DNA of 64,000 nt, from positions 176,016 to 240,015 of IMG/VR virus record IMGVR_UViG_3300047499_000113; one strand, 5' to 3'. The translations under genes and the position numbers were made by a program. Each line of letters begins with the position of its first letter. The first letter of the stretch is position 1. Below are positions 4,688-62,420 of the stretch, in pieces. The notes beneath the pieces were generated by a model. The model was not told the DNA's origin, searched no databases, and saw nothing but the letters and a program-made list of their open reading frames with translations.

Positions 4688-5576
4688 TGGGTAGCTCCCC
4701 GGCAAGCACTCGTTCGAACCGTTCCCGATTGTAGTTGATGGCAATGAAAGTGCTCGAGTCGTCTGATAGGCGACTGCCCCACTCACCCTTATCTCGGTAG
4801 AGCTGGACTCGAGCAAATTCGCAGATTCCGGGATCGATGGTGGACATGGCGGCGAGTGGGTCGTGGAACGCTTTGCCTTTCGGGTTTTTCCCAAGATATT
4901 TCGCCATCCCTTCTCGCATGAGAGCAAAGCCCGGGTTCGGATTCTCGACTCGCATCATGCGCTCGTGTGTCGCCGGATCGTAGATGACGCCGTGGCACAC
5001 GTTCTTGGAGACCAGGTGTCGCTTGAGCACAGACGGGCTCTCGAGCACGTGTTTGGCCGCCGGGACGTCGCCGTTGAGGTTGTAAGTCGCACACGTCTCT
5101 CGGCCACGGAACTTCTCGAGTCTGTACTGCTCAGGCACGACGCTATCGCCGGCGAAACCGCCTTGAATGAACATGCTCGGAATGATGACGCCGGCGCCGA
5201 GCGCCGCCGAGATGTTGCTCAAAGCCGCTCCCGTGATGACTGTCGTGTTGGGGTGACTGTGGAAGACGTCCTGCAGCACGCAGGATCCGGTCCCATCAGG
5301 AGACTTGGGAGGGATAGGCCCAAGCCAGTCGTAATGGAAGCTCGAGACGCAGTCCTTCGGATGGTTCGGGCGCGCGGAACCAATAGAGGTGTTCTTGTGA
5401 TCGAGCCGGTCGAGAACGTACCGGACAAGTCCAACCTGCGCTCTCGAACCTGGAGTGACAGTCACCGCGCGCAGAATGACCCCGGGATGCGTGCACAGCA
5501 GGCACAGAGCCATCACATCATCAGGGTCACTTGTTTCCATATCAAAAGCTATGTTCAAGCGCATCGGAAACTCCAA
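4674..5576 (-). CDS. Nucleoside hydrolase (IUNH family)
   Basis: N-terminal DMETSDPDD Asp cluster, 'TGAALSN', 'TYNLNGD', 'HDPLAA'. Confidence 0.8.
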   Translation of the reverse strand: MEFPMRLNIAFDMETSDPDDVMALCLLCTHPGVILRAVTVTPGSRAQVGLVRYVLDRLDHKNTSIGSARPNHPKDCVSSFHYDWLGPIPPKSPDGTGSCVLQDVFHSHPNTTVITGAALSNISAALGAGVIIPSMFIQGGFAGDSVVPEQYRLEKFRGRETCATYNLNGDVPAAKHVLESPSVLKRHLVSKNVCHGVIYDPATHERMMRVENPNPGFALMREGMAKYLGKNPKGKAFHDPLAAMSTIDPGICEFARVQLYRDKGEWGSRLSDDSSTFIAINYNRERFERVLAGELPSDGA

Positions 5577-5599
5577 TAGTTCGAGCGTACAATACGTGC

Positions 5600-5851
5600 A
5601 TGCCCAACTACCAGATCGAAATGCTCTGGCGCTGCGTTTGCAACGCCAAACAAGTCAACAAGGGCTTGTCCCGGCATTGCAGTAGTTGTGGGCGTCCGAA
5701 GGGCCCCGACATGGAGGAGTTCTTCCCGGATGATATAAGTATCCGGGCTGCCCTCCGGCGTGGAAATCTTGCCGTAGTCACTCGATGGGGACGATTGCAG
5801 CGTCGCCGCGGTCACGAAACTGCGGAAGTGACACTTCGTGCAGGATGTTGA
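5600..5851 (+). CDS. Small zinc-ribbon protein, possibly truncated
   Basis: MPNYQIEMLWRCVC...CSSCG; TACAAT 6 nt before the ATG; 3' end overlaps the convergent gene. Confidence 0.4.
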   Translation: MPNYQIEMLWRCVCNAKQVNKGLSRHCSSCGRPKGPDMEEFFPDDISIRAALRRGNLAVVTRWGRLQRRRGHETAEVTLRAGC

Positions 5852-6551
5852 AGTGCTTGTCCGAAATGGCGAAGAACACGGTCCAATACTTGCCGTACTT
5901 GGAGTTCTTGACCGCGTCCTCGAGTTCGTGCTCGGCCGCTTCGACTTCGTCCTGAGAACGACCCTGCTTGCGCATCATCTGCACTTGGACCTGCTTCTCG
6001 CGAGCCTCCTCGGCGATGAGGTCCTTAATGCGTTGAAGAGCGCGGAAGAAACGATGACGGACCCGGCCTTGGGTCAGGTTCATCTGCTTGGCGATCTCTG
6101 ACTGGCATGTAGTCTCGTACATGCGCCAGAGAATCTCCCTGTCCTGATCACAGAACTTGGGCCCAAGTTCCAGCTCGAACAGCTCCTCGTCCAACTCGGG
6201 AATGGTGCGGAGGAATTGAATGCGCTTGATGCCGCGGTGAAGACGATAACTCACGGCCGCCTGGGTGATGCGGAACAACTTGGCTATCTGTTCCTGCTTC
6301 ATCTTGTCGTGGTGATACAGACGGATGAGATCCGCCTCGCGCGGCGGGATCCTATCCAGGTACGGCGCCACGGCGGCGAAATCGAGTGACCGGCTCTCGG
6401 CTTTCAGCTCCTCTTCGGGCTCCGGCGCGAGTTGCGCTTCGATCAGCTCGTCGAGGTCTTGTTCGGTGTCGGCGTCGTAGCCGAGCCTATCTTTGGTGCT
6501 GTAGCGAGAAGAGAGATTACTCGGATCCTGGATCAGGATATGGGATGACAT
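5778..6551 (-). CDS. Protein with two tandem sigma70 region-4-like HTH domains
   Basis: 'IPPREADLIRLY...QEQIAKLFRITQAAVSYRLHRG' and 'DQDREILW...QSEIAKQMNLTQGRVRHRFFRA'. Confidence 0.7.
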   Translation of the reverse strand: MSSHILIQDPSNLSSRYSTKDRLGYDADTEQDLDELIEAQLAPEPEEELKAESRSLDFAAVAPYLDRIPPREADLIRLYHHDKMKQEQIAKLFRITQAAVSYRLHRGIKRIQFLRTIPELDEELFELELGPKFCDQDREILWRMYETTCQSEIAKQMNLTQGRVRHRFFRALQRIKDLIAEEAREKQVQVQMMRKQGRSQDEVEAAEHELEDAVKNSKYGKYWTVFFAISDKHFNILHEVSLPQFRDRGDAAIVPIE

Positions 6552-6721
6552 TTGGCTCCGACCGTGGCGACCCGTGAGGATCGGCAGTTTCCCGAGTATG
6601 CGTATTTGTCTGAGGACCCGTGCGGGTCAACGGAGTATACGTATTGGTCTGCGTATAACGGCGGAGCCGGTGCTTCCCGGCACGCTAATGACACACTACC
6701 AGATGAATCTTTTGTCTGGAA

Positions 6722-8367: not shown

Positions 8368-9754
8368 GCGCGAACTCCTTTGGCGCCATCGGATGGAGAT
8401 CCTTATCCAACCGTACGTCCGGAGCGCTGGTCGGACCCGTGGCAATCGGGGCCCCACGGCTTCCTTTCTCGAGCTTGTCGTCCACTGAGGTGAGCTTTTC
8501 GGCCGGAGTGAAGCTCACTCCGTCGATTTCGAGTGCTTTCGGCTTGACGATACGACGTGGAGGCTCCGCCTTGACCTCCGGTTTGGGCTCGGGAGCCTTC
8601 GGAGCCGGTGCAGGCTGGGGAGGGGCCTGCTGGACGGGCGCTGCCTGCGGAGGGGCAGCCTGGGGCGCCGGCGTAGGCGGCGTTGGAGGCGTTGAGAGCC
8701 GCTTCTCCCAGTCGGCCGGCAGAGGAGTGGTAGCGGCAGGAAGATTGGGGATGGCCTCAAACAAGATGGCCTCGACGTCGGCGGCGCCGGGTTTGTCGAG
8801 CTGACCGAGGGCTTTCGCCACAGCGAGCCACGCCGGTCCACGCGTCGCGTACAGCGATGCGGGCACCATCAGGGTCGGCTTCGCCCCGACACTCGCCCGC
8901 ACGGCGCTGGTGACCACTTGGATCGTGGTGTCGCGCACCCAGGACGGTCCTTCTGTGTCGAGAAGCTCAGAAATAGCGCTCAGCGCCACCTTCGGGTCGG
9001 ACGATAGTCCTTCGAGCGCGGCGACCAGCTTCTCTGTCGCCCCGAGCCTGAAGTATGTCCTGACGTCGTCGACTGTGATAGGCCCCGCCGACGACAGCAT
9101 CTCGAGGGCAGTTAGACACGTGCGCGGGCAGTTAGACTGCGCCTGCATGATCAGCTGAAGTGCGTCGTCAGGCGCTTGAATGGACTCGGCCTCGCAGACA
9201 CGATGCAGGTGTCCAAGCAAAACGTCCACGGGCGGCGCAGAGACGGGAAACTCCGTCATCCTGTCGCGCAACGGCCCCTGGATTTTGTGAGGCTCCGTAG
9301 TGCACAGGATGACGAGCATTCGCCGATCTTCGATGCTCTTGAGGAGAGCATCTTGGGCCTGCTTCGTCAGACGCTGCGCTTCGTCTAGGATGAAAACAGA
9401 CGGCTTGCCGTTGAGATTCCCGTAGTCGAGTTCCGACACGATGGTACGCATATGCTCGACCGAGCCCTGCGTAGCGGCATCGAATTCCTCGAAACTTTCC
9501 GCGCTTTCCTGACGCACGCCGAGACATGCGTTGCATACGCCGCAGGGCTCACCGTCCTGCAAATCGTTGCAGACTACAGCGCACGCCACAATGCGCGCGA
9601 GCGAGGTTTTGCCGCAGCCCTTCGGGCCCCCGAACATCAGTGACCGCTCGCCGAGCTTTCCGCCACGACTGAGCTGATGAAGGAGCTGTACGACAGCTTT
9701 GTTCCCCAAGATATCGGCGAACTTCTTGGGTCTGTACTTGAGGTCAAGAGCCAT
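8333..9754 (-). CDS. dnaX: DNA polymerase III gamma/tau clamp-loader subunit
   Basis: 'LKYRP..F', Walker A GPKGCGKTS, Zn motif PCGVCNAC, ILDEAQRL...ALLK; Pro-rich linker. Confidence 0.92.
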   Translation of the reverse strand: MALDLKYRPKKFADILGNKAVVQLLHQLSRGGKLGERSLMFGGPKGCGKTSLARIVACAVVCNDLQDGEPCGVCNACLGVRQESAESFEEFDAATQGSVEHMRTIVSELDYGNLNGKPSVFILDEAQRLTKQAQDALLKSIEDRRMLVILCTTEPHKIQGPLRDRMTEFPVSAPPVDVLLGHLHRVCEAESIQAPDDALQLIMQAQSNCPRTCLTALEMLSSAGPITVDDVRTYFRLGATEKLVAALEGLSSDPKVALSAISELLDTEGPSWVRDTTIQVVTSAVRASVGAKPTLMVPASLYATRGPAWLAVAKALGQLDKPGAADVEAILFEAIPNLPAATTPLPADWEKRLSTPPTPPTPAPQAAPPQAAPVQQAPPQPAPAPKAPEPKPEVKAEPPRRIVKPKALEIDGVSFTPAEKLTSVDDKLEKGSRGAPIATGPTSAPDVRLDKDLHPMAPKEFARGFLQRIKGQE

Positions 9755-9775
9755 CGCGCTTATATTACAGCGCGA

Positions 9776-11300: not shown

Positions 11301-11900
11301 TCAGTCAGGCGGGCAGAAAGCCAACCCGTTCCGGACGTTATGTACCAGAATACTCGAGCGACCGCCCACGAACTGAGTGTACATGCCGACGAAGTCCGGC
11401 CGTGAGCAGAACACCGGAAACTCGACCTTGGACGGTGTCACGCGGCAGACTTTGCAGAACACGCCGTCCACCAGGTCCTTGCCGGCGGCCTTGTTGAAGG
11501 CCGTGACGGCTTTACCCTCAGGAGCTAGTACCATGTGCGGCTGGGACTTCATGCCTGATGCTTTCTGTACGTAGCTAAAAGCCGCATGAAGTTGTTTCTT
11601 GCCGCGAAAGATGTTCGGCCAGTTCTCCTTGACGGCAAGCTCGTACGCCGACTTCATCAGGTCGCCGATGAGTTCGTCGATTCTATCCGAGTCGTACTTG
11701 AAAACGCCGCTACGAAGCTTGCCGTCCTGCGTGAGCTTGCGCGACACGAGGAAGCGCTTCTCGGGCACATCCATGCCCGAGCCACTGATGACTGCAGGCA
11801 CAAATGCTGGCTTGGCTGGCGTCTCTATCCAAAGCGGGACTGCTTGGATGTTGGCGCGCGAGCGGTGCAGGTCATGGTCAAGAAGCCGGAGGAGAATCAT
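11301..11900 (-). CDS. Hypothetical protein
   Basis: 199 aa in operon. Confidence 0.6.
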   Translation of the reverse strand: MILLRLLDHDLHRSRANIQAVPLWIETPAKPAFVPAVISGSGMDVPEKRFLVSRKLTQDGKLRSGVFKYDSDRIDELIGDLMKSAYELAVKENWPNIFRGKKQLHAAFSYVQKASGMKSQPHMVLAPEGKAVTAFNKAAGKDLVDGVFCKVCRVTPSKVEFPVFCSRPDFVGMYTQFVGGRSSILVHNVRNGLAFCPPD

Positions 11901-12465
11901 CTTTCTGATCGTACCACAAATTCGACGTCAACTCGGGCGGCGGGAGTTGCGGGAGAGCAGGAATTGGCTTCCAGAATTTGGACTGGAGCCAGAACCAGAA
12001 CCGTTCGAGGAACGTCAGCGGGACTTCGTGAATGCGTTCCCCGAGGACCCACTGGAGCGTGGCGACGTCCCGGTAGTTGTTGAACACGTACTCGTCGTCC
12101 GAGAGCCTATCCAGAAAGTCCTTGCGAGCCTGCTCGAGTGTGACTCGTGGCTTGAACATCGGGCAGCGCTTCGCTTTGTCGTCCGAATCGCATGTGTCTC
12201 CCTGCCATGTCGCCGCATTGTCGGCGCCGTACATGCACAGGTGCACCGATTGGTCGTGTCCGACCACGACGAGCGTTTTCTGGATTCGAGGAGCCAGCTC
12301 CATTTCAGTCTCGAGCGAGGGCTTGTACTCGAGCTGCGCCGGCGCGTGCTCTTCATTGAAGACGCAGTTCTTGTAGCACCGAGCCTGCGTCGCTTCCACA
12401 TGTTTGTGGGCGTACCGAGACCGGAGCTTTTTGAGCCGCGACTCCACCTGAGCACGTGTCTTCAC
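11878..12465 (-). CDS. Cys-containing hypothetical protein
   Basis: 195 aa, overlapping its neighbours. Confidence 0.6.
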   Translation of the reverse strand: MKTRAQVESRLKKLRSRYAHKHVEATQARCYKNCVFNEEHAPAQLEYKPSLETEMELAPRIQKTLVVVGHDQSVHLCMYGADNAATWQGDTCDSDDKAKRCPMFKPRVTLEQARKDFLDRLSDDEYVFNNYRDVATLQWVLGERIHEVPLTFLERFWFWLQSKFWKPIPALPQLPPPELTSNLWYDQKDDSPPAS

Positions 12466-15439: not shown

Positions 15440-16432
15440 TTACTGCTCCTCAGTGACTCCTGCCTCAGCGGCCTCGAGTAGGCTAAGCGCAAGTACACGT
15501 AGATCCTCCGGGAACTTGTCCAGTTCCTTCTTGCGCGATTCGAGAGCGTCATCCGACGCCAGATTGGCGTTTTCGCGCAGCTGCGCGATGAATTCGTTGA
15601 GAGAGCGGCGCTCGTTGTCCAGCTTCTTCTTCAGTTCGAGGTCGAAGACGTGCGCGGCGTCCGCGTGGGGGACGACGTGCTCTTCGACTGAGAACCCTTG
15701 AGAGTTGAACTTGAGAGAAGCGCATTTGGGCTTGCGCTCCAGGTTCTCGAACGTGAGCGCCCCTCGAGAGATAGCGCCGAGGTTGACGAACTTCACACCC
15801 AGGTGGTCAACAATGCCTTGGTCCTTGTGGTAATGCCCGAAGATGTAGACGTCGGGGCAGCCTTCGAATACCAGGTCTCTATAGTCGAACACGCGCTCGT
15901 GGAAAAAGCTCTGGATTTTCTCCTCCGGAGCCATCGCGGCGAGTGCGTGCACAACGGCCACCGTGAAGTTCTCGTCTTTCTTCTTGACGAGGGAGTGGAG
16001 GCCATCGACGTCGATGTCAGTGGTATATTCGACACCGACCACACGCACTTTCAAACTCCCGTCTTCGAACGTCTGCTCTTGCAGGTGGTTGAAGACGTGG
16101 GACTCGAGGAGGACTCCGAGCGGCTGACCCGGAACCGTGCCCGGATCGTTGTTGCTCATGTCGTGATTGCCAGCCAGAGCCCATGTCGGACACGGGTAAC
16201 GGCGATGCAGTCGCGCTGCCATCGCCATGGTCCGCATGGTAGTCTTGTTGGCGGCCTTCACATGGAAGAAGTCGCCACCCCTGAGGAAAGCGTTGGCCCG
16301 GAAGCGCTCGGCGAATCCGCCCTGCCACTCTATCTTGGACAGGATAGCGGCCCGATAATCGTCTTTGCGAAAACCGGGGGCTAGATCTGCAAGATGCTCG
16401 TCCGATGACGAGACGAGGCGCACTTCGGACAT
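15440..16432 (-). CDS. Mre11/SbcD-like metallophosphoesterase nuclease
   Basis: SDEHL, GGDFFH, GNHD and GHYH motifs. Confidence 0.85.
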   Translation of the reverse strand: MSEVRLVSSSDEHLADLAPGFRKDDYRAAILSKIEWQGGFAERFRANAFLRGGDFFHVKAANKTTMRTMAMAARLHRRYPCPTWALAGNHDMSNNDPGTVPGQPLGVLLESHVFNHLQEQTFEDGSLKVRVVGVEYTTDIDVDGLHSLVKKKDENFTVAVVHALAAMAPEEKIQSFFHERVFDYRDLVFEGCPDVYIFGHYHKDQGIVDHLGVKFVNLGAISRGALTFENLERKPKCASLKFNSQGFSVEEHVVPHADAAHVFDLELKKKLDNERRSLNEFIAQLRENANLASDDALESRKKELDKFPEDLRVLALSLLEAAEAGVTEEQ

Positions 16433-16465
16433 ACCTGACGGTACACCGAGGACTTATTGGAAGGG

Positions 16466-18736: not shown

Positions 18737-18776
18737 AGGGAAACCGGTTTTAGTGCCTTTGTAAGATTCTCCCTAT

Positions 18777-19373
18777 ATGAGAGTTTGCAAAAGCTGCTCC
18801 AAAGATGAAAATACAACAAAGTTCAACGGAAGAAGCAGGTCTTGCATTGAATGTCACAAGGCAAGATGCGTCGAAAGAAGAGCTTTCATAAAGCTATCGA
18901 TCCTTGCCCACTACAGCAACGGGGAAACGAAGTGTGGTTGCCATGGGTGCGGGGAGTCGAGAGTCGAATTTCTCACTGTTGATCACATCGACGGAGACGG
19001 CCGCTCCCATCGAAAAAAGATAAGAATTCCGTTCTATGAGTGGCTCTGGCAGAACGAGTTCCCGCCAGGGTTTCGGGTTTTGTGTTTCAACTGCAACTGT
19101 TCGATTGGACAATGTGGTTATTGCCCTCATATTGAGAAGTCAAGGATTCCGAGCCTGGAACACTTGAAACATGTGAAGATACTTCCAAGTGGACGAGGTG
19201 GGAGGGCTTGGAACGCGAAGCTAACTCCAGATGCCGTGAGAAACATCAAGATAGGTAAAGAGAACGGCGTTCCGATCAAACAGTTGGCCCGACAGAATGG
19301 CGTAAGCCCGGCCGCCATACGAGGAATCCTTAGAGGCGAAACGTGGAAACACGTGACTACTGGACCTTCTTAG
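18777..19373 (+). CDS. Free-standing HNH-type endonuclease with C-terminal HTH
   Basis: CxxC clusters, TVDHIDG, LCFNCN, 'NAKLT...' HTH; AT-richer than and antisense to its neighbours. Confidence 0.8.
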   Translation: MRVCKSCSKDENTTKFNGRSRSCIECHKARCVERRAFIKLSILAHYSNGETKCGCHGCGESRVEFLTVDHIDGDGRSHRKKIRIPFYEWLWQNEFPPGFRVLCFNCNCSIGQCGYCPHIEKSRIPSLEHLKHVKILPSGRGGRAWNAKLTPDAVRNIKIGKENGVPIKQLARQNGVSPAAIRGILRGETWKHVTTGPS

Positions 19374-20225: not shown

Positions 20226-20263
20226 ACCCTGCCAGGATACATCCGCCACTCTGGAGCTTACGA

Positions 20264-40962: not shown

Positions 40963-41000
40963 GATGAACGATACAGCTTTAGTTACTTCGCCTTGACGAG

Positions 41001-43625: not shown

Positions 43626-43640
43626 TGTAAGTTCCCCTCG

Positions 43641-45076: not shown

Positions 45077-45084
45077 CGTCTGGT

Positions 45085-45381: not shown

Positions 45382-45408
45382 GCTGCTTGTGAAGGGTAGC
45401 GTTTGACC

Positions 45409-48497: not shown

Positions 48498-48546
48498 GCC
48501 CAGTGCGCCGGCCTCGTTGGGGCCTTATTTCCTTGTAAAGTTACAC

Positions 48547-49146
48547 ATGCCCGGCGAGCAGCAAGAAGGCCAGGTTGATGAAGCACAGCCCGCGGTTGAG
48601 GTCGCAGGAAAGGACCTCATCCTCCATCTCGGAGGCGGCGGAGGGAGCGATAGCACCCCACCGGATCCGAAGGCCCAGAGACTCAAGTCATGGGCGAACA
48701 TCATCGCAACGACGGCAGCGCTGGTCACGGCCGTTGGAGCACTCATCAGACCGCAAGACCAGACGGCGACGAAGAACGCGTACGAGCAGCTCAAGACGTC
48801 GATTGAACAGACCAATCAAAACGTGCAGAGCAATCACGACGATGTAGTCGCATTGCACAACTACTTGCAGGGGTACTTCGCTTCGAACGCACAGGTCTCT
48901 CTGCCGCCGCTCTCCGGCTCGAGCGGAGGTGGGTCGAGCGGGTTCAGCAGTGGCTCAGGCGGTCCTGCTCCTTCGACTTCGTCCACAGCCAGGAGACCAC
49001 CGCCGTACACCGCAGCGCCCACCACTACGGCGACGATGGCTTACGCGCCGTCACAGGCATCGCCAGCGTTCCCGCTGCCGCCCGTCGCGTCCAACGTCGC
49101 TCCGCCTCCCCTGCCGCCATTCGATTCAGTCGCGGCTAAGAAGTAG
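48547..49146 (+). CDS. Single-TM, coiled-coil, Pro/Ser-rich protein (possible lysis accessory)
   Basis: One hydrophobic helix; near the endolysin. Confidence 0.5.
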   Translation: MPGEQQEGQVDEAQPAVEVAGKDLILHLGGGGGSDSTPPDPKAQRLKSWANIIATTAALVTAVGALIRPQDQTATKNAYEQLKTSIEQTNQNVQSNHDDVVALHNYLQGYFASNAQVSLPPLSGSSGGGSSGFSSGSGGPAPSTSSTARRPPPYTAAPTTTATMAYAPSQASPAFPLPPVASNVAPPPLPPFDSVAAKK

Positions 49147-49713
49147 GTCCTGACCGCATCGGAGCGCGTGCACGATCTCGATGAGGCGTGGCCATGTGTG
49201 AATCCGCTTGAACCCACGTGACGTCCTGTTGTATGTCATATCCCACAGGAGTGCGTGGGACTTCGGGTGCCACTCTTCCCATTTCTGAATCGTCTTGGGA
49301 CGATCATCGACGAGAAGGTCGCCACGTACGTGGTGCTTCTTGAACGCATGCACAATGTCGTCGTGCGCCGCGGTGTAGAATCTGTGCAGCCACTCTTGGC
49401 GCTCACGCATCCATGTCGGATTGTGAGGATGAGGAGTCGTAACGAACACGACTTCACAAATCTGTTTCAGCTCGCGCACCGCTTCCACGGATCCGGGCTG
49501 GGGGAGGATCCGCGATGCGAAGCCAGGCTTGGCGATCGCAGCATTTAGAGCGTCCTTCATCTCCTGAGTCGGCAGGATGTCGGTCACGTCCCACGTGACG
49601 AAGTCCTCGAGCTTGAGGTTGAGGCCGAACATCTCATTCGCTACGTTCCGAGCCTCGGAATGGAAATCGCCCAGCGGTCCGTCAACATCGAGTAGGAGAA
49701 CTACGTCGCGCAT
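49126..49713 (-). CDS. HAD-family 5'(3')-deoxyribonucleotidase-like
   Basis: LDVDGPLGDF, VTTP, WL, LVDDRP, YN. Confidence 0.8.
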   Translation of the reverse strand: MRDVVLLLDVDGPLGDFHSEARNVANEMFGLNLKLEDFVTWDVTDILPTQEMKDALNAAIAKPGFASRILPQPGSVEAVRELKQICEVVFVTTPHPHNPTWMRERQEWLHRFYTAAHDDIVHAFKKHHVRGDLLVDDRPKTIQKWEEWHPKSHALLWDMTYNRTSRGFKRIHTWPRLIEIVHALRCGQDLLLSRD

Positions 49714-49735
49714 TTGACGAAAAGTACAGTCCTGT

Positions 49736-50845
49736 ATGACTACGCCCGCAGAAATTGGCTGGTCAGCCTATCAGAACTTCGAAGGTCCGTTCTACATCGG
49801 ATCTGTGCCGTATGTTCCGCCGGCGAATCCGGACTTCTTGGATTCGTGCATCAGCGTCGTGACGGCCACCGAAGGCGGGCACTACGATGCCATCAACATG
49901 TACGACTCGTGCATGCTTTCGGTCGGGATCATCCAGCTCTGCGGAAGACTCGGCGAACTAACGAACATGCTCGGAGCTTGTGCAGCGTACGACCTCGGAA
50001 CGATGAGGACAGCGTTCGCGCAGTTCCCAATTCCGGCCGATTTGAGACAAAACGGGGCCACGTGGCAGTTCTACATGCTCGACGGCCGCGGATTCGTAAC
50101 AACCGCGCAGCAGATGCAAACGCTCTGGCTCGGAGGGTCAACGGGCGCTCTTGGCGCATGGACGCCTACGCAAAAAGCGCAGGCCCGCCAAGTCGCAGCC
50201 ACGATGGCAAGCATCTGGACGAGCCCGGGGCTGCAGACGGGGCAGCGCGAGTTCATCAAGCCGAGTCTCATGACTTACGTGATGCCTCGAGCTAAGGCAA
50301 CTCTGTTCTCAAACCCCGACCAAACCGGATATGCGGGTGCGCTCAAGGCGGCTTTCATTTCATACGCGGCGAATCTGCCCGCGGTTGCGGACAAATACCT
50401 GGCCCTTGCTGCCGCAGACCCGACTTGGACTACGGCGTCTGACCAAGACAAATTCATGATGGCGATGGAGAAGATAGTCCCGGGGCCCGGCATCGCCATA
50501 TGGCCAGAGCGATACGCAACCATTCAGCCCGTGCTCGAGAAGCTATTCGGAGTGAGCCTGCCCACCCTGCAAGAAGTTTTGCAGGGTCACCCGAATCCTC
50601 CGCCGCACCCGAACGGTTTGCTGCTCACGACGACGAAGAGTATCCAGGAGTTCCTCATCGCGCATGGGTATGACTGCGGTCCGACCGGCGCCGATGGGCT
50701 TTGGGGTCCGCGCACAGAAGCTGCAGTCAAGAAGTTCCAACAGGATCACAAACTCACGATAGATGGCGTCGTCGACGCACCAACACGTGCAGCGATGCTA
50801 GCTATCTTGAACAGCCCGGGCGGTCCCACCGGGGCCCAGCCCTGA
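49736..50845 (+). CDS. Putative endolysin with C-terminal peptidoglycan-binding domain
   Basis: 'DGLWGPRTEAAVKKFQ...IDGVV' PG-binding motif; N-terminal 'TEGGHYDAINMYD...VGIIQ'. Confidence 0.7.
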   Translation: MTTPAEIGWSAYQNFEGPFYIGSVPYVPPANPDFLDSCISVVTATEGGHYDAINMYDSCMLSVGIIQLCGRLGELTNMLGACAAYDLGTMRTAFAQFPIPADLRQNGATWQFYMLDGRGFVTTAQQMQTLWLGGSTGALGAWTPTQKAQARQVAATMASIWTSPGLQTGQREFIKPSLMTYVMPRAKATLFSNPDQTGYAGALKAAFISYAANLPAVADKYLALAAADPTWTTASDQDKFMMAMEKIVPGPGIAIWPERYATIQPVLEKLFGVSLPTLQEVLQGHPNPPPHPNGLLLTTTKSIQEFLIAHGYDCGPTGADGLWGPRTEAAVKKFQQDHKLTIDGVVDAPTRAAMLAILNSPGGPTGAQP

Positions 50846-51283
50846 TCCGTAGACCTCTCCGAGGTACTCCATGGCCTGCTCGTACTCGAGCACGCGCTTG
50901 GGATCAAGCCTGCGCAGGTAGCGACGAAAGAGTGTCATCTCCCACGCTTCTCGGAGCGCTTCCTCATTGAGTTGCTTCTCGGCGATCTTGCCGAACTCAT
51001 CGGATAGCGCACGCCCAGCACACTCAGACACAAAATCGACAGCGGGTTTGATGTCATGGTACTCGCTGGGTCGATGCGTCTGGAGTTTCTTGTCGAGCGT
51101 ATCACCGATGTCCTGGACTGGCATGCCAGGTAGAATGTCGGCCGTCAGCCGCAGTCCCATCTTGAACATCACATCCACGATGTAATGCGGACCGGTGGGG
51201 CTCTTGACGATCTTCAGGTAGCGCAGTCCAAAGAGCCCGTCCTGCACGTTCAGGATAGGCTGGATGACGGGCGGCTGGGTCAT
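50798..51283 (-). CDS. Hypothetical protein ending VQDS
   Basis: Start MTQPP via ATGA overlap. Confidence 0.55.
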   Translation of the reverse strand: MTQPPVIQPILNVQDGLFGLRYLKIVKSPTGPHYIVDVMFKMGLRLTADILPGMPVQDIGDTLDKKLQTHRPSEYHDIKPAVDFVSECAGRALSDEFGKIAEKQLNEEALREAWEMTLFRRYLRRLDPKRVLEYEQAMEYLGEVYGSGLGPGGTARAVQDS

Positions 51284-51507
51284 GACTCCATAATACGCTT
51301 GACGACCTCGAGGTCGCAAGACAGGTAGCCGAATGACTCGTCGTTGTCGACTGTCTCTTCGTGAACGATGCGACCGTCGTAGCGCTTGCGGATAGTCTTC
51401 TTCTCGTCGAGCTTGAAGACACCACACCTTTTGCACTTGTACGTGAAGCTGATGCCGCGTTCTTCAGTTCCCCACTCGCCGTACTTTTCCCACTCGTGCT
51501 CGGTCAC
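51280..51507 (-). CDS. Small HxW-CxxC protein ending IMES
   Basis: MTEHEW...CKRCG...CDLEVVKRIMES. Confidence 0.7.
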   Translation of the reverse strand: MTEHEWEKYGEWGTEERGISFTYKCKRCGVFKLDEKKTIRKRYDGRIVHEETVDNDESFGYLSCDLEVVKRIMES

Positions 51508-51923
51508 GATTCCATGATCGGTTCGACCACGTAGTGCTCCTGGAGCACGAGCGTGGCTTGCTCGAGGGTCAGCCGGTTGGTGATGCCGTACGCGCGCAGA
51601 GCCGCGGAGAACGCCTTGCGTTTCCAGAGCAGCTCGAATTCGGCGATGTGCTTGTCGAGATCCTGGATGTGCCAGTCCAATGCACCGTCCTTGCCGACGC
51701 TCTCGACGAGGCTATGGGCCACCTCGTCGAGAATCCTCTGCCTGTTGCCTTGTGGCTTCGGAGACCACTGGAACTGGTCCGGCTTCTCGTAGCCGTAGAG
51801 ATCCACGGTGAAGTTGGTCTCGGTGTTGTCAGACGACATCACCTTGACTTTGAGCACCTTGGCTACGCTCTTGGCGGTCGGGTGGCGCTCGAGTGATACG
51901 TCAGCGACGTGGTAGGTGCGCAC
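51504..51923 (-). CDS. Hypothetical protein ending IMES
   Basis: 139 aa ending VVEPIMES. Confidence 0.65.
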   Translation of the reverse strand: MRTYHVADVSLERHPTAKSVAKVLKVKVMSSDNTETNFTVDLYGYEKPDQFQWSPKPQGNRQRILDEVAHSLVESVGKDGALDWHIQDLDKHIAEFELLWKRKAFSAALRAYGITNRLTLEQATLVLQEHYVVEPIMES

Positions 51924-51974
51924 AACGAATAATACAGGAATCGAGGCGAAATTTCCGTTGTAGGGTTCTCCCCT

Positions 51975-52187
51975 ATGGGCCTCGAAGACATCCGCAGTCA
52001 GTTGCAGCAGTTGAGCGACACGGATCTCATTACCCTTCTGAATGACGTCTCCGACGAAGTAAAGCGCCGGAACACCATCATGAAGGGGATATTGGGAGAC
52101 CAGGGGCCGGAAGTCCGAAAAGAGACAGTTCAGCAGGGTTTGCGAACCATCTTCGATGCGCTGAGCGGCGGGAAGACGAAAGGCTGA
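51975..52187 (+). CDS. Hypothetical protein
   Basis: 70 aa helical ORF. Confidence 0.6.
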   Translation: MGLEDIRSQLQQLSDTDLITLLNDVSDEVKRRNTIMKGILGDQGPEVRKETVQQGLRTIFDALSGGKTKG

Positions 52188-56113: not shown

Positions 56114-56149
56114 CTCACTCGAGTGGGACGGCCCCTAGTAAGGTAGGGC

Positions 56150-56581
56150 ATGACATGCCCTGCAGGACCGCTTCCGTCAAACGAGTGGACAGTCTGGCTC
56201 GGCCCCGTGCCGTCGCAGCTTACGCAGTTTGCTGTGAAGGACTTGGCGCAGGAAGCGCAAGAGCCGTATGGCTACGAGTGGACGACCACATACGACGGCC
56301 AACAAGTCATGGCCATCAAGCAGCACCACACGTGGACTTACCACAACGGGAAGCTAGTCACCGGAATCTGCATTCCGGGCATTACGCTCTACAGGCCCAA
56401 GAAAGTCGGAGTCGAGGAGACTCCTGTTGACCTTGGAGTACCAAACAACGACGTCGCGTGGTTTGATGAGGGCCCTGGCGTGAGCTGGACGTCTGTTGCC
56501 TGGACGGCCGCAGCTGCAGCGATTGTCATTGCGCTCTTCTTCCTTGCGATCCGTAAAATGGGAAAGAAGCCCGTAAAGTAG
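56150..56581 (+). CDS. Hypothetical protein with C-terminal membrane anchor
   Basis: Hydrophobic helix followed by a basic tail. Confidence 0.6.
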   Translation: MTCPAGPLPSNEWTVWLGPVPSQLTQFAVKDLAQEAQEPYGYEWTTTYDGQQVMAIKQHHTWTYHNGKLVTGICIPGITLYRPKKVGVEETPVDLGVPNNDVAWFDEGPGVSWTSVAWTAAAAAIVIALFFLAIRKMGKKPVK

Positions 56582-57949: not shown

Positions 57950-58834
57950 TTACGGGGGTCCCCCGGATTCATATTCGCCGTGCGGTTCCTCAGGCGGCTT
58001 GCGCTTCTTGGTAGAAGGCGCCACGGTGCCCTCCTGCTCGGCCTGCTCGCGCTTCTCCTTGTGCACGGCCTTGAGGTCTCCCTTGGCCGTCTGCACGACG
58101 TCGGACTTGTAGAACTTGCGGAACTCGACGATGGGATCGTCGGTCACGCCCTCGACCCTCGTGTCCGGATGCTCGTGAACCTCGAAAGAGTAGTGCCACG
58201 GGATATGGTCTATCTCTATCTTGGCTTCGTAGACGCCGGCGATGTCCACGGTCAGCTCCGGCAGACCGCGATCATTCTTTCCCGCTTTGACTCGCCAACC
58301 CTTCTCGGTCATCTTGTTGGCCAAGTCCTGCATCTCCTTGGTCTCTACCTCCTCACGCCCGGCCATGCGGATTACCGCATGGAGCAATCTCGCCGCTTGA
58401 GGGAGACTCGGAAGCACAGTCGCGTGCCGCAACAGACGGGCAAGGGTGCGAGGGCCGATTCTCTGAGCTTCGGCATCTGCAGCCCAGGCCCGAAGAAGGT
58501 TCGACAGCACTGGAGGAGGCATGTAGTTGTGCATCGAGGGCTCGAGCGCGGCGGCCATCTTCTGCAAAGCCTCATCGCCGGCGGTGCCCGTCTTGAGGAA
58601 GTCGACCAGGAACTTCATCGGCTCGTCGGTGACGGCCTCGTCCTTGTCCGATTCGTCCTCGTAGGCATGGACGCTGACCGCGAACTGCGGACTGGACGTG
58701 GGCTTCAGCTCTACGTAGTAGCTGTCGCTCCGAGCCTCGAAGACTCCATCGCGGAAGCTCGAACGCCAGTGTTCGCCCTTGAAGTAGGTCTTCAAGTCGT
58801 CTACTGTAACCGTAGCAGCAACAAGCCTCTTCAT
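57950..58834 (-). CDS. Hypothetical protein with internal domain duplication
   Basis: Start MKRLVAA at 58834; two 'W(R)...VH...VTD(E/D)P' units. Confidence 0.6.
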   Translation of the reverse strand: MKRLVAATVTVDDLKTYFKGEHWRSSFRDGVFEARSDSYYVELKPTSSPQFAVSVHAYEDESDKDEAVTDEPMKFLVDFLKTGTAGDEALQKMAAALEPSMHNYMPPPVLSNLLRAWAADAEAQRIGPRTLARLLRHATVLPSLPQAARLLHAVIRMAGREEVETKEMQDLANKMTEKGWRVKAGKNDRGLPELTVDIAGVYEAKIEIDHIPWHYSFEVHEHPDTRVEGVTDDPIVEFRKFYKSDVVQTAKGDLKAVHKEKREQAEQEGTVAPSTKKRKPPEEPHGEYESGGPP

Positions 58835-58860
58835 CTCGGTAGAAAGTACCAAATAGAGGC

Positions 58861-59601: not shown

Positions 59602-60025
59602 GGCAGTAGCCGCACTCGGTTACTACTACCGTGGTGCGACCTTCGCGGCGGACCGAGACCTGGTCCTTCTTGTACTTGGGGCAGTTCTCGGCGTGTACGG
59701 CCGAACCGCACCAGCGGCAGCCGAGCTTGCGGGCGATGTTGGCGGCGTTCTTGGAGCGCTGGTCCTCGCACCGCTCTTTGGAGTGCTCGCCATCGATACC
59801 GCAGAGCTGACACTCGGATGCTGGAGGAGGCGGGATACGAGTCTGCTCGCGAATGAAGTCGGTGCGGCGCGAGTGCTCGCGCTTGAGATACGCGCCGTCG
59901 ACCGGGTGCGGCATCCCGGCGACGTTGAACTTCGCGGTGTCGCCGGCCGGGCAGTCGCACGGCAGGTCGTTGTTGCCGGTCTCTATGACTCCTGTGCCTC
60001 GGCACTTGGGGCAGCTCATGCCCAA
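59483..60025 (-). CDS. Cys-rich multi-zinc-finger hypothetical protein
   Basis: Several CxxC pairs. Confidence 0.45.
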   Translation of the reverse strand: MGMSCPKCRGTGVIETGNNDLPCDCPAGDTAKFNVAGMPHPVDGAYLKREHSRRTDFIREQTRIPPPPASECQLCGIDGEHSKERCEDQRSKNAANIARKLGCRWCGSAVHAENCPKYKKDQVSVRREGRTTVVVTECGYCHEKTETSHTEADERGFGGAASLGGIQHRIGCPKFVTVLC

Positions 60026-60040
60026 GATTACACGGGCCGA

Positions 60041-60430
60041 TCAGCTGCCGTGGACTGCTGCCACCTGGAAGTCCTCTTGCTCGAGGACGAGCAGGGGCTC
60101 GGTGCCATCGGCTTCGTGCTCGCCGGTCCAGCCGAAACCGACCCACTCCTTGCGCACGCGCGCGAGCTTGCGCCGGCGGCCGTTGCCGATCATGCAGCGG
60201 AACTCGGCGGGCATGGGCAGCTTGTCGACCGATTCGACCATCATCGACTGCAAGGTCTTGAACGAGATGGTCTCCCGGTCTTTCCCGGTCAGCTCGTCTC
60301 GCAGCATCTTGGTGCGCGAAGGTTTCGGCGCGGACTTTCTGGCTCGTGACTTCACGCAAGGTCGGTACGGGACAGGACTGCAATTTACAGAATGTTGGTC
60401 CGCGCCGAAGGCGCGGACAAGCTCGGGCAT
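60041..60430 (-). CDS. Hypothetical protein
   Basis: 129 aa; start uncertain. Confidence 0.45.
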   Translation of the reverse strand: MPELVRAFGADQHSVNCSPVPYRPCVKSRARKSAPKPSRTKMLRDELTGKDRETISFKTLQSMMVESVDKLPMPAEFRCMIGNGRRRKLARVRKEWVGFGWTGEHEADGTEPLLVLEQEDFQVAAVHGS

Positions 60431-60461
60431 CTTCCTATGTGTGTCAGACGGGTGACGACTC

Positions 60462-60782
60462 CTAGTCAGCCTCGTCCTGCTCTTTCCACCACTCGATGAA
60501 CCACTTCGTCAGGTGGTAGTAGTGAATCATGGCAGCGACGAAAGTGACGGTCATCACTATCTCGCACCATAGCGGGACGGGCTTGCCTATCATCCAAATG
60601 AAGAAGTGGTCCACGAACTTCACGACGTCATTACGTAGTGCACCGTGCACCGTGTACTCTTCGCAGTTGAATTTCTTGCCGTCCTGCTCGACCTTGGCGG
60701 TGGCCGCAGGCACGTAATCGGGCGGCACGCGGATACGCTCGAATACGCCGCCGCAGCGCTCGCACTTGTAGCGACGGCGCAC
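60462..60782 (-). CDS. Zn-ribbon + TM small protein
   Basis: CERC and a hydrophobic segment. Confidence 0.5.
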   Translation of the reverse strand: MRRRYKCERCGGVFERIRVPPDYVPAATAKVEQDGKKFNCEEYTVHGALRNDVVKFVDHFFIWMIGKPVPLWCEIVMTVTFVAAMIHYYHLTKWFIEWWKEQDEAD

Positions 60783-61875
60783 GGCGCGACCTGACGAAAT
60801 CGTGAACCTTCCGCGGCCCCGCGGCCGCGGGCGGGGCGCCTACGCTCTGGCCGTGACCGAACTTCTTGCAGATGTGACTAGTGGGCAGCACCCACTAATT
60901 GTACATCAGTTCCAGCGGTTGCCGTCCGGCGATCTCGTGCGGGTCTTGCCGGCGGCGGGCTGCGGACCGGACTCGTCCGCATCGGCGTCGCCAATCTCCA
61001 CTTCGTCCTTGTCGCCGGTGACGCCCGCGCATTGAAGCGACTGCGTTTCGACCAGGGCGCCTTCTGCCTTGGGCGGAGGTGGCGATGGTGCAAGTCACGT
61101 AGCCGTCGTTGTCCGAATCGATTTGGGCGCAGTTTGGGCTTGCCCTGAACCTTGATGCCCAGGTCGTCGGCCCACTTCTGCGCGGCCTGCTCGGGCGGAA
61201 CGGTGTTGTGGCGCTCGTCGCAGGCGACCTGCAACCCATCCAGCACAGGGTGAGAATGATGGCTTTCTTCATTTGCACGAGCTGTGCAGCTCGAACGGTC
61301 CAATTTACAGCAGTGGTCAGCGCCGGGCGATGATGCTTTTGGGAATGCGCGCCAGACGCTCTTTTGCGGGCAGCTCGGACTTGTACCAGACGTCGACCAG
61401 CCGGAACATGTTCTTGGTGCAGATTTTGCGGCACATGTTGTCGACTTTCCGGCTCGGACGACCGGGCGAGATGTTCAGGTCCCACATGGACTCGTAGACC
61501 TTGTTCATCAGCTCCATGATTTGGTGCTGGGTCCAGTCCTGCATATGCGCCAGGACGCGCTCTTTCTCACTGATGCGGTTGCAGGAAGACTCGAACTGGC
61601 GAAGGAACTGCTGGCCGAACGCGCCCAGGTCGGCCGGCTCTTTCGTGACGACGATGGGGCTCGACCATGTACTGCGACTTGTCCCGCCAGGCGTACGCCA
61701 GGTAGTGGTGCAGCCACAGGGTGCCGGCGTCGCGGATGAAGATGACGGACGAAATGGACCCGTGTCCGTCTTCGTCGGAAAAGACTGTCCGGGTGGGCGC
61801 TCACTGTTCGAGACTGCTACACTGGCGCGGGATTCATTTGCGAAAATGCCGCTGCCGTAGGCGTACGCTCCCCAG

Positions 61876-62420
61876 GTGAAGCCGAAAAAGTTCGACGTGC
61901 GGGATTTTCCGCTGGAAATCGTGCGGCGTGCGCTGGAAACGGGGCGCCCGGTGTCCCGGTTGGAGACCGTGGGCTACTGCATCCCGGCGCTACTGCTCAT
62001 CTACTACACGTGCTGGTCGGTCTACCGGCAGGGCTACTGGCACTGGGTGGACGCGCTGGAACTCGCCGCCGGCGCGGGCATCTTGTGGCTGTTCATCTAC
62101 AAACATCGGCTGGGCGGCAGGGACCGGCAACTTTTGGCGCGGGCCAAGCAGATGGTCAAAGGAAAGACGCAGTACGAGAGGGAGCGCTGCACGCTGGCCG
62201 AGCAGGCGGAGGTTGCCGAAGGCAGGTGCCCGGACTGCGGCGAAAGTCAGCTGATGGCGGGACCGACTGGCGGGTTCTCGACCAACGTCCAGTGCGGCGA
62301 CGTCGAATGCGGCGCTCTCGCTTCAACATCATGGGCCCGTTCGGCATAGAGCGAATCTCTCCGGCGTCGCCGCGCAAAAGTATCGACCTGTCGAGCCGCG
62401 AAACCCCGTTCAGGAACTAG
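61876..62420 (+). CDS. Membrane protein with C-terminal Zn ribbon; apparent frameshift near 62312
   Basis: Two TM helices, CPDC...C..EC; a plausible end SRFNIMGPFGIERI lies in another frame. Confidence 0.5.

What the first reader, a model, noticed from the sequence alone, without database searches (positions are those of the whole stretch)
5574..61878. Pervasive leaderless-type promoters (GTAnnnT-N5-9-start), including overlapping divergent pairs
Seen before start codons lacking an obvious Shine-Dalgarno: 5600 (TACAAT, 6 nt), 5576 (TACGCT, 7), 9754 (TAATAT, 7), 16432 (TACCGT, 5), 18777 (TAAGAT, 9), 20225 (TATCCT, 8), 34570 (TATAAT, 7), 35342 (TACGGT, 6), 40962 (TATCGT, 5), 43641 (TAAGTT, 7), 45085 (TAACGT, 5), 45409 (TAGCGT, 6), 48547 (TAAAGT, 5), 49713 (TACTTT, 7), 49736 (TACAGT, 5), 51923 (TATTAT, 5), 51975 (TAGGGT, 8), 56150 (TAAGGT, 5), 58834 (TACTTT, 8), 61876 (TACGCT, 6). 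All are preceded by G. Two divergent pairs share a central GTAC (near 5587 and 49724), so one roughly 22-bp spacer could drive two genes. Inference: leaderless mRNAs dominate, which constrains the host and may let phage translation escape shut-off of leadered host mRNAs.
Basis: partly seen in the sequence, partly recalled or inferred. Interest (0 to 1): 0.6.

Follow-up and report, generated by a model that had tools for sequence, protein, structure and literature searches.

The report
Leaderless-type promoters in a huge phage
About a quarter of the genes of this uncultivated huge phage, and of its relatives worldwide, carry a tiny conserved promoter (G-TA-3 bases-T) five or six bases before the start codon. 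Their mRNAs should therefore begin at the start codon itself, which is a known way of expressing genes but has not been described for this kind of phage or with this exact motif.

Summary
The pattern is real. All 20 listed sites read as described. Across the whole 240-kb phage record, GTANNNT lies 5 or 6 nt before 27 of 199 independently called gene starts, against about 2 expected (Poisson p ~1e-21). TANNNT without the G never occurs at those offsets. There is no -35 box and no canonical TGn. These genes lack a Shine-Dalgarno sequence. The motif is conserved in a clade of huge phages (complete genomes 362-436 kb, 34-65% GC): 20 of 25 comparable orthologues in a 393-kb relative keep it, against 9 of 80 for other genes.

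The best reading is a -10-only promoter of a sigma-70-type holoenzyme, placed so that transcription starts at the A or G of the start codon and gives leaderless mRNA.
- Leaderless genes do not dominate. They are about 20-25% of genes and about 40% of clear operon heads. The rest are SD-led, some from the same motif further upstream.
- The host is not constrained yet.
- The idea of escape from host shut-off has no support.

Complete relatives have no RNA polymerase gene, but all encode an RpoD-like sigma changed at the residues that read -12. Whether the host sigma or the phage sigma reads the motif is therefore open. No RNA data exist. This is a known mechanism in a new setting, with an unusual obligatory G at -13.

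The parts
5587..5602 (+). GTACAAT, spacer 6, ATG 5600 (83-aa ORF)
   Evidence: The ORF is conserved in G001 (62% identity), but there the last motif base is G, not T.
5574..5590 (-). GTACGCT, spacer 7, TTG 5576 (nucleoside hydrolase). Doubtful start.
   Evidence: The TTG start is unusual for a leaderless mRNA, and an ATG at 5540 is an alternative. It shares GTAC with the site for 5600.
9752..9768 (-). GTAATAT, spacer 7, ATG 9754 (clamp-loader ATPase)
   Evidence: G001 has GTAATCT with spacer 6 before an ATG one codon upstream of the aligned start.
11898..11914 (-). GTACGAT, spacer 7, ATG 11900 (199 aa).
   Evidence: First start in the ORF. The N-terminus is not aligned in relatives.
16430..16444 (-). 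GTACCGT, spacer 5, ATG 16432 (SbcD-like phosphoesterase)
   Evidence: Most orthologous loci in the clade (about 20 of the 26 compared) keep a GTA-type motif 4-8 nt before the conserved M-S-E start.
18761..18779 (+). GTAAGAT, spacer 9, ATG 18777. Doubtful.
   Evidence: Spacer 9 is at background. The ORF has flat codon-position GC and no homologue.
20223..20240 (-). GTATCCT, spacer 8, ATG 20225 (268 aa)
   Evidence: Orthologues in L003 and L005 have GTAAACT with spacer 6 at the same start.
21265..21279 (+). GTACCCT, spacer 5, ATG 21277 (370 aa).
   Evidence: G001 and L003 keep the motif at spacer 5-6.
23063..23078 (-). GTAGTGT, spacer 6, ATG 23065 (82 aa).
   Evidence: The motif is kept in G001 at spacer 5. 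L010, L022 and L009 carry GTA-type sites at spacers 4-6, of which L010's lacks the final T.
27257..27274 (-). GTAATGT, spacer 8, GTG 27259 (class II ribonucleotide reductase with intein)
   Evidence: The N-terminus is not aligned in relatives, so the start is unverified.
34556..34572 (+). GTATAAT, spacer 7, ATG 34570 (242 aa)
   Evidence: G001 has GTAGGAT with spacer 6, four codons upstream of the aligned position.
35329..35344 (+). GTACGGT, spacer 6, ATG 35342 (adenylosuccinate-synthetase-like)
   Evidence: G001 has GTAAGGT with spacer 5 at the same start.
40960..40974 (-). GTATCGT, spacer 5, ATG 40962 (119 aa)
   Evidence: G001 has GTAAGGT with spacer 5. Codon-position GC is typical of coding sequence.
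43627..43643 (+). GTAAGTT, spacer 7, TTG 43641. Doubtful.
   Evidence: TTG start, 76-aa ORF, no homologue.
45073..45087 (+). GTAACGT, spacer 5, ATG 45085 (98 aa)
   Evidence: G001 has the identical GTAACGT with spacer 5.
45396..45411 (+). GTAGCGT, spacer 6, ATG 45409 (859 aa, Ig-like repeats)
   Evidence: This start has the best coding score. The N-terminus is not aligned in G001.
48508..48549 (+). Hairpin with T-run (48510-48524), then GTAAAGT, spacer 5, ATG 48547
   Evidence: A terminator-like site lies directly before the promoter. This start has the best coding score.
49711..49727 (-). GTACTTT, spacer 7, ATG 49713 (NT5C deoxynucleotidase)
   Evidence: The Pfam profile aligns from residue 4, which supports this start. 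It shares GTAC with the site for 49736.
49724..49738 (+). GTACAGT, spacer 5, ATG 49736 (endolysin-like, 369 aa)
   Evidence: G001 has GTATAGT with spacer 5. The two start codons are separated by only 22 nt.
51281..51296 (-). GTATTAT, spacer 6, ATG 51283 (161 aa).
   Evidence: This start has the best coding score. The motif is not kept in G001.
51921..51935 (-). GTATTAT, spacer 5, GTG 51923 (139 aa)
   Evidence: First start in the ORF and the best-scoring one.
51960..51977 (+). GTAGGGT, spacer 8, ATG 51975 (70 aa)
   Evidence: Codon-position GC is typical. There is a weak G001 homologue.
56138..56152 (+). GTAAGGT, spacer 5, ATG 56150 (143 aa)
   Evidence: First start, one codon after an in-frame stop.
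58832..58849 (-). GTACTTT, spacer 8, ATG 58834 (294 aa)
   Evidence: It lies 26 nt after the stop of the upstream gene. The motif is not kept in G001.
60017..60031 (-). GTAATCT, spacer 5, ATG 60019 (178 aa).
61863..61878 (+). GTACGCT, spacer 6, GTG 61876 (157 aa)
   Evidence: First start in the ORF. GC3 is 0.82.

Best explanation
GTAnnnT (tGTAnnnT in the wider clade) is the -10 element of this phage's main promoter class. It works without a -35 box. In most copies it lies 5-6 nt before an ATG or GTG, so that a sigma-70-type RNA polymerase holoenzyme would start the transcript at the first base of the start codon. That gives a leaderless mRNA, translated without a Shine-Dalgarno sequence.

The same motif placed 15-26 nt upstream drives some short-leader, SD-led genes. 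About a fifth to a quarter of genes, and about 40% of unambiguous operon heads, are of the leaderless type. They include replication, nucleotide-metabolism, lysis and baseplate genes.

What is shown: the motif, its spacing, the absence of SD, and its conservation. What is inferred: that it is a promoter, that the TSS is at the start codon, and which sigma reads it. On the last point I put about even odds on the host primary sigma and on the phage-encoded RpoD-like sigma.
For: - Positional peak of GTANNNT at spacers 5 and 6 before independently called starts in G000, in the complete relative G001 (27 and 16 of 285) and in 25 further loci (30 and 16 of 330). There is no such peak in the high-GC bacterial contigs of a MAG analysed the same way.
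- The T, A, T pattern with three free positions is the signature of a -10 element. The spacing of 5-6 nt to a purine matches the TSS distance reported for Thermus and its phages (bioRxiv 10.64898/2026.04.20.719267) and for Deinococcus leaderless genes (PMC12340547, PMC4007540).
- These genes lack SD. 49 of 51 start with ATG or GTG.
- The motif and its spacing are kept at 20 of 25 orthologous starts at 50% GC, while the free positions and spacers diverge. They are also kept across 34-65% GC.
- Divergent gene pairs are only 20-22 nt apart, so nothing else can serve as their promoters.
- A terminator-like hairpin lies directly upstream of one site.
- Canonical -35/-10 sites are not enriched (7 against 4.8 +/- 2.0).
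- No RNA polymerase beta-like gene is found in five complete relatives, but all carry sigma-70 family genes.
Against: - There are no RNA data. The only runs that hold this DNA are DNA metagenomes from moss and a mine, so no TSS is mapped.
- Four fixed bases give too little information. About 480 GTANNNT copies occur in the record against about 50-60 near starts. Either further determinants exist or spurious initiation is common.
- 15 sites lie within 15 nt of an upstream same-strand gene. Those genes could also be read from polycistronic RNA.
- My gene calls are home-made and miss small genes.
- Sites with spacers 7-9 or TTG starts are individually uncertain.
Confidence: 0.8

Rival explanations
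1. Sub-variant A: the motif is read by a phage-encoded sigma factor bound to host core polymerase. The candidate is the RpoD-like 377-402-aa protein, or the approximately 220-250-aa sigma in which Pfam finds only region 2. The leaderless programme would then be a property of the phage clade rather than a copy of host promoters.
For: - All five complete relatives encode both sigmas and no polymerase core.
- In G001 the sigma genes lie at 73 and 100 kb, just outside the part that the 56%-complete G000 covers.
- The G before TA is obligatory even in relatives below 45% GC: A-, C- and T-TANNNT show no peak. That is not a feature of published TANNNT logos of leaderless-rich bacteria (PMC3160421, PMC12340547).
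- The RpoD-like sigma has K/K/R at the position of E. coli T440 and H/H/Q at the position of Q437, whereas the four solved primary sigmas whose alignments were printed read WWIRQAITR. From my own knowledge of the sigma-70 literature, these are the residues that read -12.
- The sigma genes themselves are SD-led and lack the motif. One has a TGnTATAAT-like site upstream.
- A huge phage that encodes its own sigma-70 while targeting the host's is on record (PMC7162821).
Against: - The motif precedes replication, lysis and structural genes alike. It would therefore have to serve nearly the whole programme.
- The precedent cases, the Thermus phages, use host holoenzyme.
- The residue argument is inference, and no binding was tested.
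- The sigma gene is not present in the record that holds the window.
Confidence: 0.4
2. Sub-variant B: the motif is read by the host's primary sigma factor. The phage copies the promoter and leaderless grammar of a host phylum rich in leaderless genes, as Thermus phages do.
For: - TAnnnT next to ORFs is the standard leaderless promoter of Deinococcus-Thermus and Actinobacteria, and to a lesser extent of Acidobacteria (13%) and Deltaproteobacteria (PMC3160421, PMC12340547).
- Thermus phages phiYS40 and Lalka27a make mostly leaderless transcripts with host polymerase (bioRxiv 10.64898/2026.04.20.719267).
- A jumbo phage of an acidobacterial host shows TANNNT at spacer 6 before 6 of 72 annotated starts.
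- The source is moss metagenomes.
- Heavy use of leaderless genes implies a host whose ribosomes handle them well.
Against: - No bacterial group is known to me with an obligatory G at -13, and a literature string search found none.
- The clade spans 34-65% GC with the same four fixed bases.
- The only MAG that carries clade contigs shows no such signal on its bacterial contigs, although it looks mis-binned.
- The host is unidentified.
Confidence: 0.4
3. The motif is not a promoter. It would instead be an RNA-level signal just upstream of the start codon, such as a non-SD ribosome-binding signal or a cleavage site of a phage or host endoribonuclease that trims polycistronic RNA.
For: 15 of the sites lie within 15 nt of an upstream same-strand gene, where processing of a polycistronic RNA is conceivable. 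No TSS data exist.
Against: - The pattern of fixed T, A and T with three free bases has no known pairing partner in rRNA.
- The motif also occurs 15-26 nt upstream of genes that have a good SD.
- It is found in 20-22-nt divergent spacers, where promoters are required.
- It is strand-specific and DNA-like in its palindromic overlap at GTAC.
Confidence: 0.06
4. Chance: the reader picked matches to a loose, low-information pattern.
For: The loose pattern is expected about 32 times in the window by chance, against 48 observed.
Against: The positional peak has Poisson p ~1e-21. G is invariant. The motif is conserved at orthologues, 20 of 25 against 9 of 80, and the result is replicated in relatives.
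Confidence: 0.01

Closest known systems
Leaderless genes with a '-10 region adjacent to the ORF' (TANNNT) in Deinococcus-Thermus and Actinobacteria (PMC3160421, PMC4007540, PMC12340547)
   Same: A TAnnnT element a few bases before ATG or GTG. No SD. Often no -35. A specific spacing requirement. About 20-45% of genes.
   Different: Here the element needs a G directly 5' of the T, with T often before that G. The published logos, as described in the texts I read, are plain TANNNT. Here it is in a phage clade spanning 34-65% GC, not in a cellular genome.
Thermus phages phiYS40 and Lalka27a (bioRxiv 10.64898/2026.04.20.719267, which cites Sevostyanova 2007).
   Same: Large phages without their own polymerase. 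Most of their transcripts are leaderless and start 6 nt after a TANNNT. The late class uses a phage-specific -10 variant (TAGGGT plus C at -25) that implies a modified specificity.
   Different: A different phage lineage and unknown, non-thermophilic habitats (moss). The specific base is G at -13. One motif serves replication, lysis and structural genes alike. Sigma genes are present in relatives. No TSS data exist.
Extended -10 (TGnTATAAT) promoters of sigma-70
   Same: Independence from -35, compensated by extra contacts just upstream of the hexamer. The sigma residue H455 is kept and E458 is conservatively replaced by D in the phage RpoD-like sigma.
   Different: The G (and T) abut the hexamer, at -13/-14 rather than -14/-15. 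No base separates them from T-12.
T4 late promoters (TATAAATA read by gp55), from my own knowledge
   Same: A -10-only promoter read by a phage-encoded, reduced sigma. Sliding clamp and clamp-loader genes are present in the phage.
   Different: The sequence is different. T4 late mRNAs have leaders. The small sigma of the relatives is only shown to have a region 2. No link to the clamp was tested.
Jumbo phages phiKZ and AR9
   Same: Genome size class.
   Different: Those phages encode their own multisubunit polymerases and have no leaderless transcripts (phiKZ, PMC8244752) or have 26-491-nt leaders (AR9, PMC5312081).

Membership tests
Sigma-70-family -10 promoter element | Invariant T, A and final T with three weakly constrained positions (TAnnnT) | tested here: met
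   The positional peak needs all of T, A and T. The middle positions carry 0.1-0.2 bits.
Sigma-70-family -10 promoter element | Transcription starts at a purine about 6-7 nt after the hexamer | not testable with these tools
   No RNA runs hold this DNA. Indirectly, an A or G of a start codon lies 6-7 nt after the hexamer in 38 of 49 sites.
Canonical -35/-10 promoter | A TTGACA-like box 16-18 nt upstream | tested here: not met
   No information above 0.15 bits at any position from -45 to -2 relative to the hexamer. Consensus scan: 7 against 4.8 expected.
Extended -10 promoter | TG at -15/-14, separated by one base from the hexamer | tested here: not met
   G is fixed at the base adjoining the hexamer, and T is enriched one base further upstream (72 of 128). 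There is no signal at the canonical TGn register.
Leaderless gene class (-10 adjacent to ORF) | A -10 element 5-8 nt before ATG or GTG, enriched over other offsets | tested here: met
Leaderless gene class (-10 adjacent to ORF) | No Shine-Dalgarno sequence before the start | tested here: met
   2 of 51 against 79 of 149 genes have GGAG, GAGG or AGGA at -17 to -4. The comparison is partly circular, because starts of the other genes were chosen with SD as one criterion.
Leaderless gene class (-10 adjacent to ORF) | The mRNA 5' end coincides with the start codon, and the mRNA is translated | not testable with these tools
   Needs TSS mapping and proteomics or ribosome profiling.
Thermus-phage type host-polymerase leaderless programme | No phage RNA polymerase | tested here: met
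   No RNA_pol_Rpb2_6 match in G000 or in five complete relatives, while the control rang in 14 of 14 genomes. The T7-type search was uninformative because its control rang nowhere.
Thermus-phage type host-polymerase leaderless programme | Temporal promoter classes with distinct -10 variants | tested here: inconclusive
   One motif precedes replication, lysis and baseplate genes. A separate SD-rich region almost free of the motif exists in G001 at 320-360 kb. Timing is unknown.
Sigma-B-type promoters (GTTT -35, GGGTAnnnT -10; PMC11205660) | GGG before TA, and a GTTT box about 14 nt upstream | tested here: not met
   Only one G is fixed, the preceding base is T-enriched, and there is no upstream box.

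The most novel reading that the evidence does not exclude
A clade of 360-440-kb phages carries its own RpoD-like sigma factor whose region 2.4 is altered (K/R at the T440 position). This sigma redirects host core polymerase to a minimal tG-TAnnnT promoter set 5-6 nt before start codons. Most of the phage genome would then be expressed as leaderless mRNA by a phage-specified grammar that works across hosts of very different base composition.
Probability: 0.35. Interest if true: 0.75.

Novelty: new variant of a known kind. Interest (0 to 1): 0.55.

Why it matters
- Annotation. Gene callers tuned to SD will misplace starts for about a quarter of the genes in this widespread huge-phage clade. The motif gives single-base start and operon boundaries for free.
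- Biology. It would be the first case of a leaderless expression programme in uncultivated huge phages. Characterised jumbo phages (phiKZ, AR9) do the opposite.
- Specificity. The obligatory G at -13, together with a phage RpoD-like sigma changed at the -12-reading residues, offers a directly testable case of promoter-specificity engineering by a phage.
- Host search. If instead the host sigma reads the motif, GTANNNT before starts becomes a searchable fingerprint for finding the unknown hosts.

Tried and rejected
- Host from binned genomes. The clade protein hit two MAGs. In the Lentisphaeria MAG, contigs C1-C3 (40-41% GC) are phage pieces inside a 60-69% GC genome whose own contigs lack the motif, so this is probably mis-binning. 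The Methylobacter hit is a 3.8-kb contig. Neither was accepted as a host.
- INPHARED. There was no DNA match. Protein hits are distant: an unannotated 485-kb uncultured phage, and Tunturiibacter phage Tunturi_5 at 27%.
- Other signals. A search for a -35 box or a canonical TGn found nothing. The window has no tRNA and no Rfam hit.
- Weak Sigma70_r2 hit in G000 at 16476-16577(+). It scores 17 bits, below the cut-off, and lies on the strand opposite to all its neighbours, so I dismissed it.
- Phage translation factors that might favour leaderless mRNAs. There is no bS21 and no IF3.
- Motif avoidance. GTANNNT makes up about a third of all TANNNT, as expected from the G content, so there is no sign of selection against stray copies.
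- The string 'GTANNNT' in the literature returned nothing relevant.
- An endonuclease guess for ORF 36538-36990 had no Pfam support.
- Not used:
  - Read laying, because only DNA contigs are available and they cannot show RNA ends.
  - The large protein searches, structure prediction and complex prediction, because the question did not rest on them.

Full report
**What the window is.** The window is the last 64 kb of a single 240,015-bp IMG/VR virus record (59.8% GC). The record is linear, CheckV rates it 56% complete, and it is found in moss metagenomes. It encodes phage-type replication, nucleotide-metabolism and lysis genes:
- a class II ribonucleotide reductase with an intein;
- a RecD2-like helicase, a clamp loader and a sliding clamp;
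- an SbcD-like nuclease and exonucleases;
- ThyX, a PurA-like protein, an NT5C nucleotidase and an endolysin-like protein.

The window has no tRNA and no Rfam family, and there is no DNA match among deposited phages.

An SbcD-like protein retrieves 28 related IMG/VR loci with 34-65% GC. Five of them lie in complete genomes of 362-436 kb with terminal repeats. The record is collinear with positions 111-310 kb of the closest of these, G001 (393 kb, 49.7% GC).

**Checking the observation.** The loose pattern is common by chance: 48 matches in the window against 32 +/- 5 simulated. I therefore tested position.

I called genes with a periodic Markov model that knows nothing of upstream motifs. I then asked how often TANNNT ends at each distance before the first start of each ORF.
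- GTANNNT occurs at spacer 5 in 15 genes and at spacer 6 in 12 genes, out of 199. It occurs 5 and 2 times at spacers 7 and 8, and about once per offset elsewhere.
- Internal in-frame start codons show nothing.
- TANNNT preceded by A, C or T occurs 0 times at spacers 5-6. Against the local background the Poisson p is about 1e-21.

Aligning the sites shows four fixed bases (G, T, A, T). There is no -35 box, no canonical TGn, and a weak preference for T before the G that becomes clear in the wider clade (72 of 128). Motif-bearing genes lack SD-like sequences (2 of 51 against 79 of 149), and 49 of 51 begin with ATG or GTG.

**Replication and conservation.**
- The same peak appears in the complete relative G001 (27 and 16 of 285 genes, with non-G TANNNT flat).
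- It appears in 25 other clade loci (30 and 16 of 330).
- It appears separately in the AT-rich members, where G is the rarest base class yet still obligatory.
- A negative control, the high-GC bacterial contigs of a MAG run through the same script, shows 0 and 1 of 185.
- At the gene level, 20 of 25 motif-bearing genes whose N-terminus aligns in G001 also carry the motif there, against 9 of 80 other genes. The free positions and the spacer sequence differ.
- For the SbcD-like gene, most of the orthologous loci compared (about 20 of 26) keep a GTA-type motif 4-8 nt before an invariant M-S-E N-terminus. Two have instead an SD-led start, one of them with the motif moved 19 nt upstream.

**What it most likely is.** The T-A-3N-T pattern, the strand specificity, the 5-6-nt distance to a purine and the lack of SD fit a -10 promoter element placed so that the transcript begins at the start codon.

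This arrangement is well documented for Deinococcus-Thermus and Actinobacteria (PMC3160421, PMC4007540) and was validated experimentally in D. radiodurans (PMC12340547). It is also documented for Thermus phages phiYS40 and Lalka27a, where 5' ends lie six nucleotides after TANNNT and most transcripts are leaderless (bioRxiv 10.64898/2026.04.20.719267).

Three local facts support a promoter role:
- Divergent genes have start codons only 22 nt apart (window 49713/49736, an NT5C nucleotidase and an endolysin-like gene, both starts independently supported). In G001 a pair is only 20 nt apart (53366/53387). This leaves room for nothing but the two overlapping motifs that share GTAC.
- A terminator-like hairpin sits immediately before the motif at 48535.
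- The same motif lies 15-26 nt upstream of several genes with good SD sequences, as expected of a general promoter.

Canonical sigma-70 consensus sites are not enriched.

**How far it goes.** Under a permissive rule, 51 of 200 genes in the record and 21 of 69 in the window are of this type. Control offsets suggest that about 7 of these are chance. Among genes with a divergent neighbour, which must head a transcription unit, 17 of 40 carry it. 'Pervasive' is therefore fair, but 'dominant' is not.

The motif precedes helicases, the clamp loader, the nuclease, the reductase, glycosyltransferases, the endolysin-like gene and a baseplate-wedge-like gene. In G001 it is nearly absent from a 40-kb region near one genome end, which is packed with small genes carrying strong GGAGGTG sites. 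That region may be a separate expression class.

**Which polymerase.** Neither the record nor five complete relatives has an RNA polymerase beta-like gene. The T7-type search was uninformative.

All five complete relatives encode an RpoD-like sigma of 377-402 aa with regions 1.2, 2, 3 and 4. They also encode a sigma of 220-250 aa in which only region 2 is detected. In G001 these genes lie just outside the stretch covered by the incomplete record. They are SD-led and lack the motif.

In region 2.4, the four solved primary sigmas whose alignments were printed read WWIRQAITR. The phage proteins read WWIRH..K or WWIKQ..R, while H455 is kept and E458 becomes D. From my own knowledge of sigma-70 genetics, Q437 and T440 read position -12. 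A basic residue there could plausibly read a G at -13, but that is inference.

The obligatory G across 34-65% GC adds to this, so a phage-specified promoter is about as likely as a host-specified one. Against it: the Thermus-phage precedents use host holoenzyme, and heavy reliance on leaderless mRNAs implies a host whose ribosomes accept them, which usually goes with host leaderless promoters.

The host is unknown. Binned-genome hits are unreliable. A distantly related jumbo phage of an acidobacterial host shows a modest TANNNT peak at spacer 6.

Nothing supports escape from a shut-off of leadered mRNAs. Many phage genes are leadered, and no IF3 or bS21 homologue is present.

**Limits.**
- No RNA data exist for this DNA, so the TSS position is inferred.
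- The gene calls are my own and miss small genes.
- Sites with spacers 7-9 or TTG starts (5576, 43641, 18777) are individually weak.
- Read laying was not used, because DNA contigs cannot show RNA ends.

**Verdict.** The finding is a real, conserved, position-specific promoter motif that gives leaderless genes. It is a known mechanism in a new setting (a worldwide clade of huge phages) with an unusual fixed G at -13. Whether the phage's own sigma factor reads it is an open and testable question.

Noticed in passing
window 23204-27289 (-): The class II (B12-dependent) ribonucleotide reductase gene carries an intein with a LAGLIDADG homing-endonuclease domain, about residues 400-782 of 1361.
   Followed up: no
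window 48508-48549 (+): A GC-rich hairpin with a T-run is followed within 10 nt by the GTAAAGT motif and the ATG at 48547. Terminator, promoter and start codon are packed into about 40 nt.
   Followed up: partly
G001 (L054-L055), about 320-360 kb of the 393-kb relative: Two divergent arrays of small genes carry very strong Shine-Dalgarno sites (GGAGGTG: 60 and 34 hits per 20 kb against about 5 elsewhere) and almost no GTANNNT-start sites. This may be a separate (early?) expression class. The region is not present in the incomplete record that holds the window.
   Followed up: partly
L063-L066 and L080-L082 (Lentisphaeria MAG JBAZJM01, contigs C1-C3): Three contigs of 40-41% GC (248 kb in all) carry the clade's genes and the motif, but are binned in a genome whose other contigs have 60-69% GC and no motif. 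This is probably a phage genome mis-binned into a bacterial MAG.
   Followed up: yes
L030, L031, L032 (sigma genes of complete relatives G003, G001, G002): The RpoD-like phage sigma has K/K/R at the position of E. coli T440 and H/H/Q at Q437 in region 2.4. H455 is kept and E458 is D.
   Followed up: partly
window 18777-19373 (+): This 198-aa ORF lies in a gap between minus-strand genes. It has flat GC across codon positions (0.46/0.48/0.53), no homologue in relatives and no Pfam hit. It is either a recent acquisition or not a gene.
   Followed up: partly
window 39037-40371 (+) and 35342-36517 (+): A 444-aa ThyX with two Thy1 stretches and an adenylosuccinate-synthetase-like gene lie near an NT5C nucleotidase (49126-49713) and a nucleoside hydrolase (4674-5576). 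Together they form a sizeable nucleotide-salvage set for a phage.
   Followed up: no
L058 (Tunturiibacter phage Tunturi_5, 100-150 kb): In this isolated jumbo phage of an acidobacterial host, TANNNT ends 6 nt before 6 of 72 annotated starts, three of them with a preceding G. Other offsets score 0-2. Leaderless-type promoters may be present there too.
   Followed up: partly
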